Assembly (NCBI GenBank): GCA_964106645.2
Contig: OZ067043.1
Origin: Podarcis pityusensis
Lineage: Eukaryota
Direction: 5' to 3' (one strand)
Length of the DNA stretch: 64,000 nt
The position numbers and the translations under genes were made by a program. Below, in pieces: positions 43,664 to 64,000 of this stretch (its first letter is position 1; the number at the start of each line of letters is the position of its first letter). Below the pieces are notes generated by a model. That model was given only the letters and a program-made list of their open reading frames with translations, was not told where the DNA came from and searched no databases.

Positions 43664-43822
43664 GAAAAGCTCCATATTCTGGGAAAGAATTACCAAGAAG
43701 AGGGGCCTCAGGGCAATGACATCCGCAAGACCAACGTGGCTCAGATCCGCATGGCCTACCGCTATGAGACATGGTGCTATGAGCTCGATCTTATAGCCGA
43801 AGGGCTGAAAAGTACTGAATAG
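43664..43822 (+). CDS. AMPD1: AMPD1 exon 16 ([10 protein letters not shown]...IAEGLKSTE*)
   Basis: AMPD1-type C-terminus; summed CDS is 2241 nt = 746 aa plus stop. Confidence 0.97.
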
Positions 43823-49631: not shown

Positions 49632-50519
49632 CTTTAAACAATAACTGTGTGTTATTGCAACAGCTTGCTGCCATTTGCTTCTAATTGGTTTTCCCATTTG
49701 CTGACTTGAGCACTGGGTGAAATGGGCCTCTCTGCCTTGCCCGAGCCCTCTATCCTGCCTGATGGAGTCTCCCATGGGAACAAGAGGGAGCATGGAAAGG
49801 TATTTGCTAAGCCTAGCAGAGCCTATCTCACAGCTACACATCCCAGGGTGGGTCACGTGAGCCTAACTGGCTGGTGCCTGTCGGTGGGCATAGTGCCACT
49901 ACAGCACCTGAGGATGAGTGTGCAGTGGGTGAGCCTGCAGGGCGTTTTGCTCGTGGGTGTGTGGAACAAGATTCCAGGTGGTGTCAGTGGAAGCGTTGCT
50001 CAGATAATTTCAGCTTTGGCAACAAACGAAAAATTTCTTCCTGGAAGTGCAGACATTGCTTGAGTGCATTCTGAGCAAGATGTTCTAGGGAGCCATCATA
50101 ATGTATATATTTTAATTGTTTTATATCCGTATTATTTATTGTGCTTAACTTAACAGAGTGCAAATTTAACCTATATAGATTTGCATGTTCTCGGTTGCTG
50201 TTTACGTCCGTATTTCTGGTCTGTGAGCGTAATAAATCGATTCATTCATTCATCATAATTATCTGTAGGGTTCATGTTTTTTCCCCCATGAGTTATCATG
50301 ACAGTGGTTGAAAAGCCTAGTTGTTGTTTTTTAAAACAAGACTGGAATATAGCCTGAGGGTTTTAAAAAATGCTTTATTTGCCATCTCATGGATGAAAAA
50401 TGTTCATCATAACCTTGAGCCTTCGAGTGTTTTACTGAAGACTCTTGTAGCACCAGTACTCCCATTCCATGATGCAGAGAAACTGCACTGTGCACGTGTT
50501 GAAAGTGGACTGTGTGAAG

Positions 50520-51220
50520 GAAGCCCGAGCGCGCGGCTGCGTGATGATCGGGCTCAGACATCCTCCTGCTCGCCTTTCTGTTCCCTCATCCTTATTCACC
50601 ATCCCCGGGAGAGACGTGGGTTGCCGCGGCGCTGCAACAAGGAGCGCAGCAGAGCGCCAGAATGAGCCGAGCCTCCAGCTCGGCAGCGAAGCAGGGCCAG
50701 CGGCGCCCACGTGTACCGCGGGGTGGGAGGAGGGAGAGAGAAGCAGAGTAAGCGGGAGTCCATATAAGGCGAGGCGAGGGCGGGGCTTGAGGCCGGAGCG
50801 ACGCAGGCGCTAGCCAATGGGGGCTTGGCCAAATGTGCCCGCTCCGGAGAGCGCGTCTGGTGGCTGCTTGCAAAGTTGCGAGCGAGCCGAGGAGCCCGGA
50901 GTGCAGTTGGCCGGTGGGGAGCGCGGGTGCCTCCGCTGCCGCCATGGGAGCCGGTGAGTGGGAGACGTGGGGGGCTGTCTGCCTGGGGGCCCCTTGGAGG
51001 TATCGCCTGCCTTGGCTCGGAGCTGGTTGGCGAGGCGCCCTCCGGGTTATTGCCCCCTTGGAGAGCCGCTTTGGGCGCCGCTGCCTGCCTCCCTATCTCC
51101 CCTCTGGGACACCGAGGCTTCGGGAGGATGAGAGGACCTGACCTGCCTGAGGAAAGATTGGGGCCGGCACCCCTCCCGGTCCCAAGGGACCCCCCCCCCC
51201 CGTGGGGAGAGGCCGTGAGG
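50520..51220 (+). promoter_or_regulatory. CpG-island promoter and first exon (donor CCG|gtgagt after 50953) of the next gene, probably DENND2C by synteny; E-box 50708, CArG CCATATAAGG 50760-50769, GC box 50778, CCAAT 50814
   Basis: CpG density and motifs seen directly; identity inferred only from the conserved order CSDE1-NRAS-AMPD1-DENND2C. Confidence 0.7.
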
Positions 51221-51589
51221 ACTAGACACTCAGGAAACAGAGAGGCGTTTTCTTCTCTGTGTGGGTCTGGTTTGTTTGGTAGGGCTTAGGCTGAACCCTT
51301 CCTCACAACCGGAATCTCTCGTGAGTGTTAAGGAGCCATGGGAAGTAAGTAATGGAGGGCGCCTGAGCGTGTGCAGAGTGCCTTTTCTGCAAGCCCGGGA
51401 TTCAAAGAGAGAAAGAGAGTGATAGCGATTTTCAGGGTTCGTAAACATGCCCAGATAAAATGCTGGTGGCTGCTTGGCAAATACTTGGGATGCCTTTATA
51501 AGCTGGTTTGCCTTGCTGCTCTTAAATAATCTGTGTAATAGGGTGCGTAACTGGTGTTTTATACATAATAACAGTACTTGTTAATGATA

Positions 51590-51875
51590 GTACCGAAAGG
51601 AAGTTCTAATTTGCACAGCGCATAAACGATGGGATTTACTGTCACAAGATGTGGTGAAGGCTACCCGCCTGGATGCTTTCTGAGGGGATTCGACAAATAA
51701 ATGGAAGATAAGAGTAGCAATGGCCACTTGTCATTATGGCTGTTTAATATCTCCAGGACTGGAAACCCTGTGACTTTAAATATCACTTGCTGGAGAATAA
51801 TGGCCAGAAAAGGCTACTGCCGTCGTGTTGTGTGGGCTTCTTTTTGGGCACTGTGAGAAACAGGATGCTGGACTG
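51590..51875 (+). mobile_element. CR1 LINE 3' fragment
   Basis: cacaagatgtggtgaaggc...ggattcgacaaataaatggaagataag...aacaggatgctggactga. Confidence 0.6.
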
Positions 51876-53419
51876 ATCCTTCTTCATAAGTTATTATATT
51901 AGCTTAATTGTAATTGCTCAGTTTTGAAGTATTACCAGTTCAGGCAGCCAAATAGGGTGTTATAAAGGAAAATGTTTTGCTATGAGTCTTTTGACACATA
52001 TGCCTTGTTAATTTGGGAATTTGTATGTGCTTGTGGTGTTTGAGCCCTGACAGTTCGCATGCGCACCATGCACCCCTCTCCCAAAGTTAGTAGTGAGCTC
52101 TGCTGTCAGTGCAGGTTGGTGGTGGAAAAAGTTGACTGATTTCTCCAGGAATGCCTTCTGTCCTTCCAGTATAGTTGGGAACTTGGAATTTTGCTTGTGC
52201 ATCTAGCCCCAAATTAATAAGAAGTCACTGACCACCACAGTGTTGTTGTCAAAGGAATATTTTGCTAATTCTTCTTACTGGGGTTGCCAAAATGGAAAAT
52301 GTATCCCAAGTCTACCCTGATATTGAACCCTAGTGCTATAGCATTTTAGGATGCCATATATGTTATTATTCTTGTGGTTCAAGATTGCCATATGGTCTAC
52401 TGAACAAATGTTTAAAGTGGGGATTTTCAGATTCCCTAGAATCCTTTCTGAAATACTAATGCTGGTGTCCTCTGAGGAAGATTTATCACTCTGGATTAAA
52501 TGGAGGCAGGTGACAGCTTTCTGAGTGAAGGCGAAGCCAACACTCTTTGCTCTAACATCTGTGCAAACTCAAAAGGTTTGGGTTGGAGGAGAGTCAAAGT
52601 GTCTAAACAGCGGATTCCCCCCCCCCCCACCCGCACTGTTTTGAAGCAGTTTCACAGCAAAACCAGGAAATGGAGTAATGGTGTCCTGTGACCTTTTATT
52701 ATATTTAGGAGAGAATGACAATGGTTCTTTTCCTAATAGAGAAACAAAGGGAAAATGTTGGATCAGGAGTTTTGAATAATGCCGCAACAGCCTGGTTGAG
52801 GGGTCAAAAGGGACAGGACTTTTATTGAGTTGTCAGATTCTTCAGCCTGCTGAGGGGGTATCTGTGAGCCTGGATACTAGGTTGCAGTTATGAATTTGAA
52901 GAGCAGACAAATGCAAGCAACTGCAACTCTCAATACTGTGGTGGTAGGAAAGATATATTGTTTTGCTGTGTGGAGCTTTCAAATAACAGAGGAAGTACTG
53001 AGGTTTTTCCTGGCTTTGGGAGCTTTTTACAGGAAAAGATGTGAAAGTTTTCTGTCCTTTCAAAAAATGCAGAAATATTTTTTCTTTCTTTTCATATGTA
53101 CACTTGTCAGTTAAAAGAAATATGGGGGAGATGGAGGGAACTCCCTGTTTTGTTGGCACTGGATTGGCTTGGAAAGTCAGATTTTCTCTCTCTATATATT
53201 TTTGACCCATTACAAGGTTTGAGGTGATGTGGTGGTAGATCTTCTTGAAGATTACCAATGTCAGAAACAGGTAAGGTTATTTGCTATCTAAATTGCAGAC
53301 CTATACGCATTTACTTGGGAATAAGCCAGCATTTATTCCCTTTTCAACTTCCCATTCTTTAAGATCTGCTGATTACTTTTTCCATGTTCCTCTTCCATCA
53401 GAGGTGCAAATACTATGTA

Positions 53420-53520
53420 TAAGGAGAGGGCTTTCTTGGCAGTGACAACCTAGTTATGGAATGCACTCTTCAAAGAGGATCACCTGGCACCAACACTGCT
53501 ATCATTTTGGCAGCCAGACT
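53420..53520 (+). mobile_element. L2 LINE ORF2 C-terminal fragment
   Basis: Reads RAFLAVTT*LWNAL, similar to RAFSVAAPRLWNALP. Confidence 0.5.
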
Positions 53521-55100
53521 TGTAAATAAACCCACAAAAGTTGCTAGTCTGCAAAACCTTTTTTAAAAAAAAATTACTACCGTGCTGCAGACTGGGAAAG
53601 GGGATGGAGATAGTGCTGTCCCTCCTGCAGTAACCCACTACACTTTTGTGCTAGGTACACAGGAGGGAGAGACAGAGCACTTTGCACACCCATCTGCAAG
53701 CAATTCCATGCATATTCCTGCATCCAGTACCTTCTTACCTCACCTCTGGCTACCAGGCTACTGTTTAAATGCAAAGCACTCCCTAATTAAAAATAAATAA
53801 ATACTCAGATGTTTTAATAGATTTTATTGACTTAATTGTGCAAGTTGTAGTCTCTTTTAAATTTTATCTGCTGTTTAATTGTGTTTTTTATGCTGCAAAT
53901 ACTGCCTAGAATTTTGGTATGATGGAAGGGTGGTATTGAATCATTTGAATTTAATGAATAAAGTCCCATTTGATTAATGGGACTTACTTCTGTAAATGTA
54001 CAATGGATCAAAATATAATTGGACAAAGTAGTTTATCATTTTAAACAATTATCTCCTTGCTGAGAGGTTGAGCAGAATTGTTGGTACTTTTGCATTTGGG
54101 AACCGAGATTGAAGAGAGGGTCTATGAGTTCATAGTACAGTGAAGATTCAAAGCTAGTTTTCCTGGGTCAAGTCTGGCAGGCTTTTGAAATAGCCTGTGA
54201 AACATCCTTCATAACCACAATTTGTTTGTAGCTTTAGCAATATTATGTTTCTGTTGTGGGTGATGCTTGCACTGCTGCTTTATCTCTTTCATTGGAAAAC
54301 TGGTTTGTTCATCTGTGGAGAACGCTTAAAATGGCAAGGCTGCTTATTCTGCAAAATGTATATGCACAGCCACTTGATCTCACCTTCCATTCATGAACAA
54401 TTTTCCAGTTGAGTGGCTGTAGTTGAGGTTTGCAGCACCTGTGCTGGGATGACTGGTTTAAAGAACAGGCCATTTTTATGGATCATGGAGGTTCTTCTTC
54501 CATCATTAGCTTGAGGTATCAGTCTCACAAAACTGTTACATTTCGAATTCCCTAAGGATTTGGCAGTCCAGAGACAGATTGCTCTGATCTGCCACATCAT
54601 GGATTGGCAAGATTAACCCCTACTTAGACATACAGATGTGTTTTACTGGGAATTAGATGCTGTGATGGCTTTAAGTGACTCATTATGGTGTTATGATAGC
54701 ATTTGACTCTGATATCTTGTTTTTTAAAAGGTTTGATATTCCAGTGTGATATGAGAAATCAGCATTCAGAATCAGCGACCTTTTATGCATGCTTGTGAAA
54801 GGAGACCTGCAAGCAGTGGCTGTCTGTAATTTTTGTGTTTGCAAAGTGTTGAATGTTAAGATTGTTGGAAGATCAGCCCAGGTAGCTGCTGTACATGGAA
54901 CTGGGGTTTGTATGTGCGTTATCTTGTCATTCACCTCCAGCAGCAAAATGTCCTGGGCTTCTATACACATTCTTCTATCTTCACCACATTTGCAAGATTA
55001 GGATGATAAGGTTGTTGGATCTGGCCACAGGGCTGGCCCAGGACATTTGACAGCCCTAGACAAAACCGAAAATGCTGCATGCCGATGCATGCACACTGCT

Positions 55101-55101
<1 letters not shown>

Positions 55102-55133
<32 letters not shown>
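55102..55133. repeat. (AC)n microsatellite
   Basis: Seen directly. Confidence 0.95.
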
Positions 55134-55135
<2 letters not shown>

Positions 55136-57361
55136 CTGCGGTGAGCAAGGGACTAAAAAGAGGTGTGCGGCAGGCAGGCATTTGTGTGGGTGTGCAGGCA
55201 GATCCACCGTCCTAGGCAACCGCCTCACCCCACCTCTTTCATACCAGTTTTAGGATACTATTTCCCTTCTCCCATCTTTCGCCCCACGTCCATCTTCTTG
55301 CCTGTAGAGTTAAGCACTCCACCACATCTGTTTAGGGGGATTGATGACCAAAGTCTGACAAAATCACTTTTGCTCTGTGACCTTCCTTGCTGGTGCAGTG
55401 CAGCTGTCGTCTTGTGTTGAACTGTGAGGAACAGTCACTCCAGTATGAGTTCACATTTGCCATTAGCATAATTTCCTTAGAGGGAAAAGCAGAATGATCT
55501 TAGACTCTGTAAACCAGTGCCAGGGAACCTGAGGCCCTCCAGATGAAGTTCTGTTGCATGGACAGTGTTCTGCCCATTAACTACCAACACTTTCTAGTGA
55601 AAGTGCTGTGCACTTTTTATCTCTTGATCCTATAACTACATTTCAGAAATATATGGGTCTTACTCCCATATAAGTGTGCAGAACATTGCAAACAGGTAGT
55701 CTTCAAGTGCATGATCTTGCCTTGTGTCCTTGCAGAGAGCTAAACAAAAACCTATTCATCTAACTGAAGCTCCTTTCTCTCCTAGCAGGAATAGTTTTGT
55801 AGTGACGGCTGTAGGATGAAAGGTTTTGGATTTTGCTTTTGGTATAAAGTGCCTGTTTATTTGCACATTGAGATGTTTTAATTGATATAGTAGCAACCAA
55901 ACAGTGTGCATATTTGTACGGAGGGAGAGTACATGGATTACAGAATAGGAAATGTGATTTAAATCAGTTTGATCTTTTCTGGAAAGTTCCTTGCAGCTTG
56001 TCTTGGGAGGAGCCAGTAACCCTAGAATGTGAGGGCAAGGATGATGCTCAGAAGAAGCTGTGCAGGATGACTTGTGTAACATGCTTCCACAGTACCATAA
56101 GACCCTATTGTGTTGTGTGTTCCCCTGGGAGAGCCCAGCCCTGCAAGTTTGTATCGATATAGATTCCAAGAGGTTGTGTTGTCTCAATGAAGTGCTTCCT
56201 TTCTGCTGTTTTGTGTCAACTGTAAATCTCTAGGCTCTTTGCCAAAGTATTAGCCTGAATCTGCCCTGGCCTACTGACAGGAGGGAAAGGGTGTTAGCTA
56301 GCTAGCTGGATTGCTTTATATTCCTGTTCATATCACAGCTTGGAGCAGCAGAGAGCCAGCTTTCTCTCTGTGTGGTAGGATTTTCCCTCTTCCAAGAGGC
56401 TCATAGCAGAGTGAACTGGGAAATAATACCTCTGTTAGTTAGATCCTTTGCTGCTGTTAGAAATAACATATTTTCTGTTTGCATTTTGTTTTCTATTTTA
56501 TTTTAAATAGTCAAACTTTACACTTCTGGGGAGCAGGATAAGAAAAATTTAGTAGAATTTTCCTTCTCTGGAACACATTTTTAAACTGGCTTTTTTCTGT
56601 ATTCTAGAATTGACATTTCTGTCTTGGGGCCAAACTACACATGGCATTAATCACTTGGTTTTACACTGAGTGCAGGATTTTTCTTGTAGAAATGTCTAGT
56701 GTGGTATTCTGATGGGGACCCTGCAGTGGGCTGTGGGTGGGGCAGGGTTTTAGCTTTCTCTCTAATGGGATATTTTTCTCTGTGCAAATTGTGCTTGTGG
56801 GGCTCCAGATGTGATCTGTGACTCCAGGGTGTGGCAGAGGGTGAAGAGCCCGCTCCCAAGTCCTGCTCAGAATTAGGTCCCCCATACTGGCTGTTTCTGC
56901 AGGAAAAACCCTCCACTCAAAAGGCAAATAATTTGACTGGTATCACATATCTGTTTAAAACTGTTTTGTTTTTTAAAATTGTATTTTGCATTGCTGTGAC
57001 CTGCCCTGTATCTTTTTGGTGAAGGGCAGGTGAAAGTAGTAGTAATAATAGTTGTTATCATTTAGATTATTATTCTGGTTGTTGTTGTTATATTTATACC
57101 CCACCTTTCTCCCTGATGGGACTCAAGGAGGCTTACATATAAAAATGAGAACTGTTAAAAACATAGAAAAAACAATTAAACATTGTTAGAAGTAAAGCTA
57201 TATACGTATATAAAATCTATTTAAAACCATACAAATAATCACAATAAAACCAATAAAAGTTTAGTCTTTATTGTGCTACTTCCTGCCTGCTGTGGGATCG
57301 AAGTGGGAATTAAGCACTTTTTTTCTTTTCTTTGGGTAGCACCTGAATAACTTAGGTTCAT

Positions 57362-57537
57362 GGGAACATAGGAAACCGCCTTAGTCAGACCATTTGACCA
57401 TCTAAGTCTACACTGACTGGCCATAATTCTCCAGGGTTTCAAGCACTGAGTCTCTCTCTGCTTTACGTGGAAATGCTTGGGATCAAATAGGGGATCGCCT
57501 GCATGCAAAACAGATACTCTACCATTGAGCTTTGGCC
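57362..57537 (-). mobile_element. tRNA-headed SINE with CR1-like tail
   Basis: Same layout as 35404-35582. Confidence 0.7.
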
Positions 57538-59052
57538 TTTCTCCAGTACCCATGGCTTGGCTCGATTCTTTTCACCGCTTGTCACTCTTGTGAAACTGCC
57601 TCACAGTTGGGGCTCCTTGGTTACCTGTGAGACACATGGCCTTTTGACAAAGAGAACTAAAGCTTTGTCCTCAAGCTAAGGAAGTGCTGGAATTCCATGT
57701 GCAGGCCAAGGCTGAGAACGCACCATTTCTTTTCCTCTGCAAGCAGGTGCCCCTCCAGCCCCAAGCCTAGCTAGGCAAAGGTCAGGCTTGCTGTTCCTGC
57801 CTCTGAGCCAGTGACCTACTTTGTTGATGGGAGAGCTGTATATGCTTGTGTGTCTGCGTGTTCCGCTCCCTCTGGAGTGAGAGGAAAGCCAGACATGGAG
57901 GACCCACCCCTCATTATTAATGTCTGCAATCCAAGCTGTTGGTTTCTCACAGTTTTCTGCTTAAGACTAAGAACTCTTTGGAAGAGTCTTCACCAAGACT
58001 TCCTCGACTAGGGAACAGAAGCTGTCCTCGGATAAGCACAGAAATTTCTGCACAGACTAGGATAGCCAGGTGCCATGGAGGAAAGGGCTCAGATAAACTT
58101 AGATAACTGTGTAGGAGGGAGCTTTGAAAAAAGCAGCATTCCTCATTTTTGAAGTACTGTGACCTTGCAAGAAGCATCTGCTGAAATCCAGAGAGAAAGA
58201 GAAAGCAGTTTCTCAGTACAAAGAGGCAGGGACTAGTGGTTACTAGGAGGAAACAGAAACCATTGCAGAATAAAGCGCTCTTGCTTTTGGGACACTGAAA
58301 ATTATTCTCTGGTTACATTGAGGCCAATTGTTTTTAGCATTGTATCACCTATGGTTGTCAACTTGTTTCCCCCCCTTTAATCTGACAAGTTTCTTGCCAA
58401 CCAGAAGGAGCTCAACAGGTGTCACTTTCCTGGGTCTCAAAATATATGTGCAGCAAAAAGCCCCCACCCCTTTGGTGGTGGTAGTCACAGAATGTTTTGT
58501 CAGTGACAGCGGAGAGAGCCATCAACCCTATTTGCAATTTCATTGAAAGGTGATCCAGTTATGGACTCGCATTTTCCACTTTTAGGACACGTGCAAACTT
58601 TCAAATTGAATCAGACTTAGGAGCAATAAGTTCTTCCTATTTATTTCTAGAGAAACCAGCTGTATGGCAGAGCACTGATTAGGTGACAATCAATCACTTC
58701 CCTTCCATTTCCTTATCAAGCTGTGCAGTTTACTAATTAGCTGGTCCTTGTACGATGCTTCTAAACTGTCATTATGTTAGGTGGGATTCAACCACATACC
58801 AGTAAATTTGGATTAAAGCTGACTTGGAACTCTTGTACAACAAGCCTACTTCCCCAAAAAGATCAGAGTCTTTGTGATAAGGAAAGTAACAGTAAAGTCC
58901 ACTGGAAAGTGTGAGATAACTCTTCCTTTGACACAATGTCATTTTTCCTCCCCAGAAATAAGTCAGAATGAATGTTCATTACACAGCCAATGTTATCTAT
59001 TCTCCTTGTAAACAGGGTGAATACTCAATAAACAGGTCATTCGAAAACACAT

Positions 59053-59580
59053 ATAGAACCACAGAGTTGAAAGAGGTCTTGTAGTCCCTCTAAGCTTAAC
59101 ACAGGAAATCCAGAGATGGAGCATCCTTAACAGATGTTCATCTTTGGCTTGAAGACCTCCAGTAAAGAACAGTTCACCAACCCTCTAGGTAACTGTCAAG
59201 ATCCTGTAACCTTCAATAAGTTTCTTCTCATGTCAAACCAAAATCTGCTTGTAACTTAAGGTGATTGGAACAAATCCTGTTCTCTGGGCAGCAGAGTACA
59301 AGTCTTTGCCCTGTTTTGTGTGTCAATTCTTCAAATGTTTGAAGAGTACTATTATGAGTCTACCTCCCTTCATGTCTTCTCTCCTCCAGGCTAAAGGTAC
59401 CCTGTCCCTTCATAGGATTTCTTTTCCATACCACTGGCCATGCTTGTTGCTGTCCTCTGGTCCTGTTCCCATTTGTTTATACCATTCTTAAAGTGCAGCA
59501 CCCAAGACTATAGACACAGTGTTCCAGATGGAGTCTGACCAGTGCAGAATAAAATGGACCTGTTACTTCCTGTGACTTGT
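59053..59580 (-). mobile_element. CR1 LINE 3' end, degraded
   Basis: tagaaccacagagttgaaagagg reversed tail; cacagtgttccagatggagtctgaccagtgcagaataaa is reversed ORF2. Confidence 0.7.
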
Positions 59581-59686
59581 AATCTGTGGTACAAGGGCAC
59601 TCCTCACTGTTACCCAGAACATGCTTCCATCAAAAAATAAAATAGGTTTTTATTAAGGCATCAAATAAATATTTAAATACAGGTGC

Positions 59687-59687
<1 letters not shown>

Positions 59688-59725
<38 letters not shown>
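59688..59725. repeat. (AAT)n microsatellite
   Basis: Seen directly. Confidence 0.95.
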
Positions 59726-60484
59726 TGTTTGACTAAAACCTTCAGGGAGATATGAATATCCATACTGGAGCTATAACCAGATACCTGTGTCAGTAGAGGA
59801 GCAAAGGCAGGGAGAAGCACAAAGCAGGAAAACCCACAGTGACTGTTGGAGGGAGGGTTTGCCTTAGTTCTTAATGGGTGTTGCAGGAAATGAAGAGTGT
59901 TACAGGCACTCTTTTCCACCCGCTTGGCCTGGTGGTCTCTCCTTCCCCTGCCCAGCACTCCATGCCTATTGAGCATGGAGTTCTCATTGGGCTATCTTTC
60001 CTTCTTCCCCTTCCTTCCTTCCTTCCTTTCTTTTTTTTCTTTCTTTCCTCCATTTGGGTTTGGGTGGGGTGGGTGCCCCTGTACCCAATCCCAACTACAT
60101 GAAAAGTTTTAATTTCTCACTGTATCTCTCTGGGCAACGCTCCCTTCATTGGCTGTCAACATTTAAAAATAGCTTTTCATTGTGAACCTGGGAGTGACCT
60201 TTCCAGACAGTGGGATGGTTCCTATATTCTCTTGTTCCAGCCACTTTTCGCTATTTTTTTTTTTAATCCTGCTTTTCAGTCATTCTCTTTTCTCCTCCAT
60301 TTGCCATTTTTCTGTGTACTGTAAGTGTAAATAAGTATAAAGCAAACTGTTACAGCTAAATCCAGTCACATACTGCATAGTGTCCTGTATTTACTGTATC
60401 TAGGCACAGTGATTTAACCATCCCCTTCCTCCTTAAGAACAATCCAGGGTCCCAAGTCAGCCTCCCTTCTTTTCCTTGACCCAG

Positions 60485-60700
60485 GAGAAACCCTGCTGCA
60501 GGCCTGCATTAGGAGCCTTGCCAGGGAGTTGCATCAAACCCTGCTAAAAGTTGCTGACACCTGTGAGGAGCCTGCATTTAGCTAACAAGGATTCAACAGA
60601 CAGCGCATTGTGGAATTTTGGAATACTTTCCAAAGAGCAGTGAGCTGATGGACAATGTGGAGGAAGCAAGAGCCCAGAGGGAGAGAACTGGGGCCTTGCG
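60485..60700 (+). other. Candidate 5' leader exon 2 of the putative DENND2C, completing a spliced uORF (stop 60583-60585)
   Basis: Strong acceptor cctcccttcttttccttgacccag; possible donor GCG|gtaaaa; in phase with the exon 1 ATG. Confidence 0.5.
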
Positions 60701-63013
60701 GTAAAAACCTTGGATGCTGCCCAGAAACTTTAAATCTGCCTTTTGAAATCAGTGAAAACTGAAGAGCACAGTTAAGTGCTCATGCTTCACTGATTTCCAC
60801 AGGACAAGTTCAGCAGGAAAAAGTCAAGCTGTAGATTTGCTTTCTCTTTCCTGCATGGGAAGTTCTGTGGCATTTTCTGCTGTCATGATGTGATGGGGGA
60901 GGTTCTGTGGCTGTTGAATCTACTGCAGTCTCTGGCTGTGGGTCTAAGGGCAGAGAGTGTCAGGCGTGTGACGGAACGGGGAGGGGGAATTGATGGGTGA
61001 TGAATTCTGGGGGAGGAACGTTGGGATTAGAGCCGAAACCAGTTCTATCCCTACTTAGTGCCCAGATGAGTCACTCTTCCTGTGCCCACACCTTTGCTGG
61101 GGATGAGTGAAACAGGGTGTTTCTTATGGGCTGTCTATTTACAAACAGTGAACGATATTTTTAGATAAAGTTAAACTTTTATACCCTCTGGTGGATCACC
61201 CACGAGGATGAGGCGTCATTGAGCTCTCCTGACGCCTTTTGTTGGTTTGGCTTATGGTGAAGGCCTGGAGTGCTATTGAAATGGCTCCTGTTTTCTTTGA
61301 GACAATTAGTTAGTATAGATTAATGAACCCTTAACATGCTTAGCTTGTTCCCCATGCACCAAGAGGTGAAAGCGTAGTTAAAGTTTAGGTACAGCTTCCC
61401 TTTTATAGTACAATGCCTCTCCCCCCCGCCACTGCTCCTGTGAGTGAATTACCCTGATACAGTGTCAAGATTCTTTTTGCCTCTTGCGTATTTATTAAGT
61501 CTCCTTTTCAACTCTTATGTATTTTGTGTGAATGAAGAAAAGAGAGAGTACTGCATGTTAACCAGGTGCTATTCCTAAGTGACATTTTGAATTTTGAATT
61601 CCCTTAAACAAGTTGCATCAGGAAAATCATTAGTCTCTTGAAGAAGGTGTGGGTCTAACATGTGTTTAGAACTGTGTGTGGGTAAAAGTGCTAGTGGTGG
61701 AAAAATGAGCTAGCAGGGAAAGGATTAAGCATCCTTGTGTTGCTGCCCCCTGCCAAAGTTGGTTTTCCTTTCCTGATCATTCTTCATCAAGCTGTTTTTT
61801 TTAATTAAAAATAATATTGGGGTGTAATATATATCCACATGCAATATCTTTGTTGGCTCTAAAGTTCTTCTAACTTTGGTCTTGGTGACTGGGGTCATCT
61901 GATCCCCAGTAATGGAAGGAAGCCCTTGCAAAATTAGGACTCCCGGGTCTTTGTATTCCACTGCCCAGAGCATTCAGGTGGGGGTCCTTCAGGAAGGGCA
62001 GCTCCTAGAGATGTTTATAAGTTAACAATGATGTTTTGCATTGCCCACCATCCTTTGTGTTGTCCTAGAAGAGGAAACAACTCAACATAGCCCAGTAGGA
62101 GAAATATTCCTGAAAGAATTGGGAGGGAGGAAGACAATATGTTACTGCATGCAGTGCATCCCACCCCAGATCATTGAAAATAGATGGCTGATGGAGAAAG
62201 AAAGTGTTGCACTCTTTCACTGAGAATCTGCAGTTGTTATACACTCTATACTTTCCCTGCCCCACCGCTGTCATTTTTCCTGTTAGTGACAGTTCATGAA
62301 TGACGGTGTGTTCTCCATAACAGGACAGATGGTAGCCTTGGTTGGGGCTTGGTTTACATTTAGAAAATGTAATGTGGGTGAAAACGTTAACCTCCTTCTG
62401 CAGGGTCCAGATCCTCACCCCCACCCTGGCTATCTTTAAAAGATATGTAAAGACATAGGAGATTTGTGATCAGATCTCCAACATTTCATCTAGTTTAACC
62501 CTACTGTATGTTTTCTTTTGGCCAAAAGTATTGTACCTCTCTATAGGAGCTTCCGGACTGTTACTGTTTTGGGTGGGATTGAATTGCATACTGGCAAATT
62601 TAGGTCATGCAATTATAGTTGATTGGGAGGTCTTGCACAATAAACCTGCTTCCCCAAAAGATTGGACGTTTTTCAAGAAGGATTGTGTGAGAAAGTTTTA
62701 AGACAATAGCAGTGTGGCTGGACTTTGGTATGTGCTGCTGCAGAATACGTTTGACTGCTTCCTCTTCTCTCTTATCTTGGCTAATTCACCTAATTCCTTG
62801 TTCTGGAAAAATGTTAGGTTCCTACATAAAGAGTGTGAATCCATATGAGTCTTTGTTTCACAGGTCTTAGTTCCCAAGCCTATCGAATATTTATTTTGGG
62901 TGGACGGTCTTCTCCACTTTGGACACGGATACATTGTGTGTGTGTATTTATGTATGGATCTGTTCAAGGCTTCAAGTGGAAAACTGACACATTTGTGAGG
63001 TTTTGAAGTCTGG

Positions 63014-63132
63014 GAGTGGTATTCAACTAAATTTTATTCAGCCTGGACCCACTGAAATAAATGAACCCGACTAAGTTAGGTCCATTAATTTTAGTAGGTC
63101 TTTACTGAGTAAATCTTAGTTGAATACCACCC
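63014..63132. mobile_element. Palindromic MITE, about 120 bp
   Basis: TIRs G(A)GTGGTATTCAACTAA and TTAGTTGAATACCACCC, with internal dyad symmetry. Confidence 0.8.
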
Positions 63133-64000
63133 TGCATTTTCCAAATGATGAACCTTGGCTGAAATTTGACAAGGCAGTTCCATGCAGTTCTATAACATTA
63201 CCTTCTTGCATTTCTGAGAGGAACCTGCTGCCAAAGAACTTGGCCTTTACCCAGATAACTCTGTTCCTGTGACTGCCTCAGCCCATATCCCACTGATTAA
63301 TGGGATGGAAGAGCTGTCTCAAGTCGGCACTCATGTAGTAATTGGTGCATCCCTGGCCACGCTGGTGCACTTTCATCAGGCATGAGTGATTGGTAATGTC
63401 ATTTCACTATGGCTGTGATGCAAGCCTCTTGTTTACAGTATTTAGCAATTCTTGCTACTTGCAGCTTGAAGATGCATCACAGGAAGTGCTGTTCGGCTCT
63501 TGTCCTTGCCTGGGCTGGCAGAGGTGAATTACGTGCTTCAGAGCCAGCATTTCTCTTCCTTGATTCATCCATAACCAGTCATCTTTGGCATTTGATTTCA
63601 CTCTTTCCATAGCCACATGGGGCAACAAATGTTCCACTGAGAGGGTGTCTTGGATTGATACCAGCTTAGCTGAGGCCTTTTTCTTTTTTCTTTTTGGTTG
63701 GATTTGATGATCACCAAATGAAACTGGGACCTTTGTTCCTTGAAAAGGCAAGTTGGGATGACTCAGATATTAGCAATGGTAGGAAGTCAGTGTTGGCTTT
63801 TAAAGTGCTGAGGGTTCTTCTGATGCTGTACTTATACAAGGTCAACGTAAAGCATTACAAGATCCATGCTAAATGCTCTGATTAGTTAATGTTGTGGGCA
63901 CATTCATTGCTATACAATTGCTAAAGTGAAGAAGATGTGAACCAAGTCTGCGTGCCTGGATGGGCAATCATTAACAACTTCAGGTAAAGCAAGGGCAGCC

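What the first reader, a model, noticed from the sequence alone, without database searches (positions are those of the whole stretch)
50938..60585. Spliced 36-aa uORF microprotein with perfect Kozak context and myristoylation motif in the putative DENND2C leader
Seen: the CpG-island first exon ends GCCGCCATGGGAGCCG|gtgagt, a textbook Kozak ATG (50944) only 10 nt before the donor. A strong acceptor 9.5 kb downstream (cctcccttcttttccttgacccag, exon from 60485) continues it in phase to TAA at 60583-60585. The product is MGAGETLLQACIRSLARELHQTLLKVADTCEEPAFS. Known: MGxxxS/T is the N-myristoyltransferase consensus, and mammalian DENND2C is annotated with a non-coding first exon and a later ATG. Inference: hydrophobic residues L8/I12/L15/L19/L23/V26 have helical spacing, suggesting a lipid-anchored amphipathic-helix microprotein. 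The transcript could then be functionally bicistronic, with the uORF also throttling translation of the Rab-GEF. The ORF track misses it because it is split by an intron.
Basis: partly seen in the sequence, partly recalled or inferred. Interest (0 to 1): 0.85.

Follow-up and report, generated by a model that had tools for sequence, protein, structure and literature searches.

The report
Lizard-snake upstream start codon, DENND2C leader
A strong start codon at the end of the first exon of the lizard DENND2C gene is kept in lacertid, monitor lizard and boa, so it probably tunes translation of the gene, but the proposed lipid-anchored 36-residue microprotein is unproven because its anchor glycine is lacertid-only and its splice junction was not seen in RNA.

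Summary
The window is a lacertid lizard CSDE1-NRAS-AMPD1-(DENND2C leader) locus. The sequence features are as stated: the window's only GCCGCCATGG (ATG 50944), the top-scoring donor (after 50953) and acceptor (60485), and a joined 36-codon ORF. Orthologous exon 1 from four species shows ATG, strong Kozak context and phase-1 donor kept in monitor lizard and boa; gecko has AGG and falcon has no ATG. The start codon therefore looks selected within Episquamata. Codon 2 is Glu in monitor and boa, so the myristoylation motif is lacertid-only; it also appears by chance with 5 of 16 alternative acceptors. The exon-2 helix is unusually amphipathic (top 1%), but the exon's 3' end is uncertain: the best donor (60562) lies before the TAA. 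RNA showed no junction and no raw reads. Exon 2 was unreachable in other squamates and has no match in falcon. Best reading: a lineage-specific cis-regulatory uORF (0.6). Rivals: a true N-terminal start for DENND2C (0.2) and a functional microprotein (0.12). The scan has noted other uORFs in this genome, none at this place.

The parts
50501..51000 (+). CpG island holding the DENND2C promoter and first exon
   Evidence: GC 0.68, CpG o/e 0.82; orthologous island in Varanus, Candoia, Paroedura and Falco
50708..50887 (+). Conserved promoter-like motifs: CACGTG 50708-13, CArG-type CCATATAAGG 50760-69, GC box 50778-86, GACG/CCAAT 50800-18, and further conserved blocks to 50887
   Evidence: alignments; 63 of 86 columns identical in three squamates over 50801-50887; motif names from established consensus knowledge; function untested
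50833..50835 (+). Weak-context ATG inside a promoter motif, in frame with and open to ATG 50944; probably upstream of the start of transcription (inferred)
   Evidence: spacing 111, 114 and 102 nt in lacertid, boa and Varanus, all stop-free; stop in gecko; changes mostly non-synonymous
50938..50953 (+). Perfect Kozak, upstream ATG (50944) and the 10 coding nt of exon 1
   Evidence: ATG kept in Varanus (L007 41372) and Candoia (L005 37139) with codon 2 GAA; AGG in gecko; absent in falcon
50954..50959 (+). First-intron donor GTGAGT, phase 1
   Evidence: rank 1 of 825; aligned at the same place in all four squamates; a like donor in falcon at L003 17095
51333..51350 (+). Second Kozak-ATG (51338) plus phase-1 donor after 51344; would enter exon 60485 in the same frame
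   Evidence: donor rank 3; not found in boa, gecko or Varanus
60460..60484 (+). Strong acceptor (polypyrimidine tract and CAG)
   Evidence: rank 1 of 890 AG sites in 51-64 kb
60485..60585 (+). Candidate exon-2 part of the ORF, 32 codons plus TAA; amphipathic helix over the first 25-27 codons
   Evidence: codon usage intermediate; no homologue found; use in RNA not shown
60560..60568 (+). Best nearby donor (after 60562): defines a 78-nt phase 1-1 exon and would make the TAA intronic
   Evidence: score 7.0 against 5.0 (60639) and 4.2 (60700)
60648..60704 (+). Further ATG ORF (18 codons), exonic only if the weak donor at 60700 is used
   Evidence: one RNA? contig reads through 60700 unspliced (X3 record 9)

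Best explanation
A lineage-specific, cis-acting upstream start codon (uORF) in the DENND2C leader. Shown: an AUG in strong Kozak context, 10 nt before the first donor, is shared by lacertid, monitor and boa and absent from gecko and falcon. Inferred: it was gained after the gecko split (gecko has AGG; a loss in gecko is not excluded) and kept by selection. Inferred mechanism: it is the first strong AUG, so it captures most scanning ribosomes; these cross the first junction in phase 1 and stop in a downstream leader exon. DENND2C (a Rab GEF) is then made only by leaky scanning, re-initiation, or from isoforms with other leader exons, and the mRNA may be NMD-sensitive. The peptide is mostly a by-product and its length depends on the exon used: 36 aa if exon 60485 runs past 60585, longer if the 60562 donor is used, different if exon 60485 is skipped. 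I put the exact 36-aa product at about 0.25. Lipid anchoring is not part of the conserved function.
For: ATG and context conserved in 3 of 3 Episquamata: 7 of 10 Kozak/ATG columns identical against 20 of 86 in the flanks; binomial P about 0.002, or 0.18 against the better-conserved promoter background. Codon 2 is not conserved. No DENND2C CDS is listed from this ATG in the boa or Varanus gene lists. In falcon the 5' part of the first coding exon has stops in frame with the main ATG, and a phase-1 entry would be out of frame. Human DENND2C carries an unrelated young translated uORF, c1riboseqorf148 (PMC10032668). uORFs occur in about half of genes and their start codons are the most conserved leader sites (PMC7253449).
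Against: [quoted passage not shown] The exon-2 helix is more amphipathic than 99% of non-coding stretches, which a by-product need not be. No junction, Ribo-seq or transcription start data. The DENND2C coding exons lie beyond the window, so the frame relation is unknown in squamates.
Confidence: 0.6

Rival explanations
1. The ATG is the real start of an N-terminally extended DENND2C in Episquamata. Exon 1 (10 coding nt) joins a 78-nt symmetric coding exon 60485-60562 carrying an amphipathic helix, or another exon, and continues in frame into the main ORF; the TAA is then intronic.
For: A conserved strong Kozak ATG just before the first donor is the usual anatomy of a coding first exon. The best donor is at 60562 and gives a frame-preserving exon. 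The predicted helix ends about there. Codon score of these 25 codons is in the top 5.4% of non-coding stretches. The X1 contig depths fit a piece 60486 to 60561-66. The phmmer blank is uninformative because a 50%-identity representative may lack the extension.
Against: No CDS from this ATG in the boa or Varanus gene lists (annotation of GC-rich 5' ends is weak evidence). In falcon the matching 5' part of the coding exon is closed and out of phase.
Confidence: 0.2
2. One reading: the uORF makes a stable, functional amphipathic microprotein, myristoylated at least in lacertids, so the mRNA is functionally bicistronic.
For: The top donor and top acceptor, chosen independently of the peptide, give an open frame (18 of 60 top acceptors give 36 aa or more) with a hydrophobic moment in the top 0.9%. 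AlphaFold helix, mean pLDDT 90.6. A second lacertid ATG/donor pair enters the same frame.
Against: Gly2 is Glu in Varanus and boa. The motif arises with 5 of 16 acceptors by chance. No ATG in gecko or falcon and no peptide match in the falcon leader. No homologue in 1.84 billion representatives, Pfam or PDB, and only unnamed short clusters in the ESM Atlas. The codon score is below all 16 true AMPD1 windows. No RNA reads.
Confidence: 0.12
3. No translated unit of importance: the bases are conserved because they sit against the first donor or in a promoter-proximal element, and exon 60485 is a pseudo-exon.
For: Exon-candidate depth is no higher than intron depth in RNA? contigs, and 0 raw reads. 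No run on record as RNA holds the stretch. Downstream donors are weak. Against the promoter background the ATG conservation is not significant.
Against: Gecko keeps the donor without the ATG, so splicing does not need it. A transcribed perfect-Kozak AUG is normally used (established knowledge). The tools warn that holes in contigs prove nothing, and the tissues are unknown.
Confidence: 0.08

Closest known systems
Ordinary AUG-initiated regulatory uORFs of vertebrate leaders (review of properties in PMC7253449)
   Same: Upstream AUG in a leader exon; start codon better conserved than its flanks; expected repression of the main ORF
   Different: Perfect Kozak context and 36 codons are atypical for tolerated uORFs; the ORF crosses a 9.5-kb intron; limited to Episquamata among the species tested
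Human DENND2C uORF c1riboseqorf148 (PMC10032668, supplement)
   Same: A uORF in the leader of the same gene
   Different: 23 aa, unspliced, classed as young and de novo in Primatomorpha; no resemblance by eye to the lizard ORF; independent origin
Conserved-peptide uORFs / bicistronic microproteins (ESUCA CPuORFs, 10.1101/672840; ASDURF, MIEF1-MP, SLC35A4-MP from my own knowledge)
   Same: Spliced small ORF with strong start ahead of a large ORF; predicted helical product
   Different: Those show peptide conservation across vertebrates. Here the start is missing in gecko and falcon, no peptide homologue was found, and DENND2C is not in the ESUCA supplements held nor listed with a uORF in PMC4568590 (file cut)
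N-myristoylated proteins (NMT substrates, PROSITE PS00008-type motif, from my own knowledge)
   Same: Lacertid sequence has Gly2 and Thr6 if the junction is used
   Different: Gly2 is absent in both other species that have the ATG; no basic cluster near the N-terminus; the motif is at chance level

Membership tests
Regulatory uORF | AUG in the first exon upstream of the main ORF | tested here: met
   start of transcription inferred, not mapped
Regulatory uORF | ORF present in the spliced mRNA (junction 50953-60485) | tested here: inconclusive
   no joints, 0 raw reads, one low-depth contig piece starting at 60485-60492; no positive control
Regulatory uORF | Stops before, or out of frame with, the main ORF | tested here: inconclusive
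   TAA is exonic only if the 60562 donor is not used; the CDS is outside the window
Regulatory uORF | Translated, and represses the main ORF | not testable with these tools
   needs Ribo-seq and a reporter
Conserved-peptide uORF / bicistronic microprotein | Start codon and frame conserved across distant taxa | tested here: inconclusive
   kept in lacertid, Varanus and Candoia; absent in gecko and falcon
Conserved-peptide uORF / bicistronic microprotein | Peptide conserved outside squamates | tested here: not met
   whole falcon leader shows no DNA or peptide match above shuffles; one bird only
Conserved-peptide uORF / bicistronic microprotein | dN/dS below 1 in exon-2 orthologues within squamates | not testable with these tools
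   10-kb flanks of AMPD1 end before exon 2 in all four squamate loci
Conserved-peptide uORF / bicistronic microprotein | Coding-like codon usage | tested here: inconclusive
   top 7.6% of non-coding null but below all 16 true-exon windows
N-myristoylated protein | Gly2 with Ser/Thr at 6 in this species | tested here: met
   position 6 depends on the unproven junction
N-myristoylated protein | Gly2 conserved in orthologues | tested here: not met
   GAA (Glu) in Varanus and Candoia
N-myristoylated protein | Lipid incorporation, G2A-sensitive membrane binding | not testable with these tools
   experiment needed

The most novel reading that the evidence does not exclude
A start codon born by one base change in the lizard-snake ancestor recruited a leader exon into a selected coding unit: either a 36-40 aa amphipathic microprotein or a new helical N-terminus on the Rab GEF DENND2C, with a potential myristoylation glycine added later in lacertids.
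Probability: 0.25. Interest if true: 0.6.

Novelty: new member of a known kind. Interest (0 to 1): 0.3.

Why it matters
If it is a cis-regulatory uORF, it is an undescribed, datable example of a strong uAUG gained and kept in one reptile clade, ahead of a GEF for Rab8A/8B/10/15/35 (PMC8865772) whose overexpression alters the actin cytoskeleton (PMC11547113). That is useful but ordinary. If exon 60485 proves to be under coding selection, it would be a traceable case of de novo birth of a microprotein or protein N-terminus. It also flags a likely annotation gap at the 5' end of squamate DENND2C.

Tried and rejected
Papers: none for DENND2C with uORF or microprotein. RNA: searches gave no junction. 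Tarsier and toad loci had no DNA; the skink flank ended before the CpG island; the Poecilia AMPD1-like locus is not syntenic; three look-ups failed on non-longest isoforms. A falcon candidate exon of similar size (L003 23486-23638) is not alignable above shuffles. The ORF from ATG 50833 was rejected as coding: changes are mostly non-synonymous and gecko has a stop. The second ATG/donor at 51338 is not conserved. No Rfam match in 44-64 kb. No fold search was run because a single helix matches anything.
Full report
Setting. The window holds CSDE1, NRAS and AMPD1 exons in order, with the AMPD1 reading frame ending at 43819. Most AMPD1 exon matches to Podarcis raffonei are 93-100% identical, so this is a lacertid lizard. 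No N is present. A CpG island at 50501-51000 follows AMPD1. In falcon the matching island follows the AMPD1 stop and lies upstream of the annotated DENND2C CDS, which identifies the gene. No DENND2C coding exon is in the window.

Observation. GCCGCCATGG occurs once on the two strands. A splice matrix trained on 37 AMPD1 introns ranks the donor 1 of 825 and the acceptor 1 of 890, so this is the best pairing on sequence. The 3' end of exon 2 is the weak point. The best donor within 300 nt is after 60562 (score 7.0), before the TAA; those after the stop score 5.0 (60639) and 4.2 (60700). With the 60562 donor the exon is 78 nt and frame-preserving, and the TAA is intronic.

Chance levels. An ORF of 36 codons or more follows 18 of the 60 best acceptors, and MGxxxS/T follows 5 of the best 16, so neither is remarkable. 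The helix is: hydrophobic moment 0.535, reached by 0.9% of 1,987 stop-free non-coding stretches and 0.9% of shuffles. It was, however, picked out after the fact. AlphaFold gives one helix, residues 3-27 of the exon-2 piece. Codon usage is intermediate: top 7.6% of the null but below all 16 true AMPD1 windows.

RNA. No run on record as RNA holds 60400-61000. Laying two raw RNA runs and two contig sets of a close relative on 60100-64000 gave no joints and no raw reads on 60100-62457; the contigs were scattered intron-like pieces at depth 2-6. One unlisted piece in X1 must begin at 60485-60492 if its depth is at least 2. The bin depths fit, among other solutions, 60485 to 60570-72 or 60486 to 60561-66. 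This is a hint only. Exon 1 was outside the stretch, tissues are unknown and contigs are filtered, so absence proves little. The junction is neither shown nor excluded.

Orthologues. I walked from AMPD1 proteins to flanking DNA. In Varanus the exon ends GCCGCC ATG GAA GCC G|GTGAGT; in the boa Candoia GGAGCG ATG GAA GCC G|GTGAGT; in the gecko Paroedura GCC AGG CAA GCG G|GTGAG. Falcon has a like donor and no ATG in its island. Across lacertid, Varanus and boa, 7 of 10 Kozak/ATG columns and 11 of 12 donor columns are identical, against 8 of 41 just upstream and 12 of 45 just downstream. The binomial P is about 0.002, or 0.18 against the promoter background. The ATG and its phase are thus shared by three lineages, most simply by gain after the gecko split (inference). 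Gly2 is found only in the lacertid, which removes myristoylation as the conserved function. Exon 2 lay beyond the 10-kb flank in all squamates. In the complete falcon leader neither its DNA nor its peptide matches above shuffles.

Databases and papers. No homologue of the exon-2 peptide was found; these blanks are weak for a 32-residue query and say nothing about an extension on a clustered long protein. No paper links DENND2C with a uORF or microprotein in its main text. The human Ribo-seq catalogue lists one DENND2C uORF, a different, young, de novo one (PMC10032668). uORFs precede about half of genes, their start codons are the best-conserved leader sites, and tolerated ones tend to be short and weak in context (PMC7253449).

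Mechanism. Most likely (0.6) the AUG is a cis-acting brake on DENND2C translation, with a peptide whose length depends on leader splicing; the exact 36-aa form has about 0.25. A conserved perfect Kozak AUG next to the first donor is also the anatomy of a true start, so an N-terminal extension through a 78-nt helix exon is the main rival (0.2). Against it, the boa and Varanus gene lists show no CDS from this ATG, and in falcon a phase-1 entry into the coding exon is out of frame and closed. A functional microprotein gets 0.12, a non-functional coincidence 0.08. Shown: sequence anatomy, ATG conservation, absence of Gly2 outside the lacertid. Inferred: start of transcription, junction use, translation, repression.

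Operators' notes. The spliced model was searched exon by exon, by reference; the joined peptide and the junction sequence were not sent to any search or reads tool, so that step is left out. No contig that I take for human was fetched. A human AMPD1 protein (P0058) appeared in a cluster list and was not followed up. Human table rows were seen in paper supplements and not sent to any tool. Earlier findings did not bear on this locus.

Verdict. A real, clade-conserved upstream start codon in the DENND2C first exon; the myristoylated microprotein is unsupported as a conserved entity and unproven as a transcript. New member of a known kind, interest 0.3.

Noticed in passing
window 52477-52840 (core about 52645-52795); L007 43345-43711: Conserved non-coding block in DENND2C intron 1: 82% identical over 373 nt to Varanus, nearly invariant core, a 4-nt indel, so probably an enhancer rather than an exon; not detected in falcon.
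   Followed up: partly
window 51333-51350: Second strong-context ATG with a phase-1 donor, 394 nt after the first and sharing GCCATGGGA with it; it would enter exon 60485 in the same frame. Lacertid-only among the species checked.
   Followed up: partly
window 50833-50953: Upstream ATG stays in frame and stop-free to the donor in lacertid, boa and Varanus (111, 114, 102 nt) although the residues are not conserved; stop in gecko.
   Followed up: partly
window 60586-60648: The uORF frame stays open for 20 more codons after the TAA, to TGA; codon score is like non-coding DNA.
   Followed up: partly
window 50760-50769: Perfect CArG-type box in the promoter (one of four in the window), near-match in boa, degenerate in Varanus, absent in gecko; would fit SRF control of an actin-linked gene (inference).
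   Followed up: no
window 60488-60497 and 60536-60545: Exact 10-nt direct repeat 48 nt (16 codons) apart inside exon 2, giving T-L-L twice; may be a trace of an internal duplication behind the helical periodicity.
   Followed up: no
window 49638-50043: Two short blocks upstream of the promoter conserved in boa, gecko and Varanus (75-92% identity).
   Followed up: no
window 62570-62660 and 63016-63133: Short dispersed-repeat fragments that attract reads and contigs from other loci.
   Followed up: no
L003 16885-17100: In falcon the DENND2C CpG island begins directly after the AMPD1 stop codon; the first donor lies about 7 kb (lacertid), 6 kb (Varanus) and 9 kb (boa, gecko) after it in squamates.
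   Followed up: no
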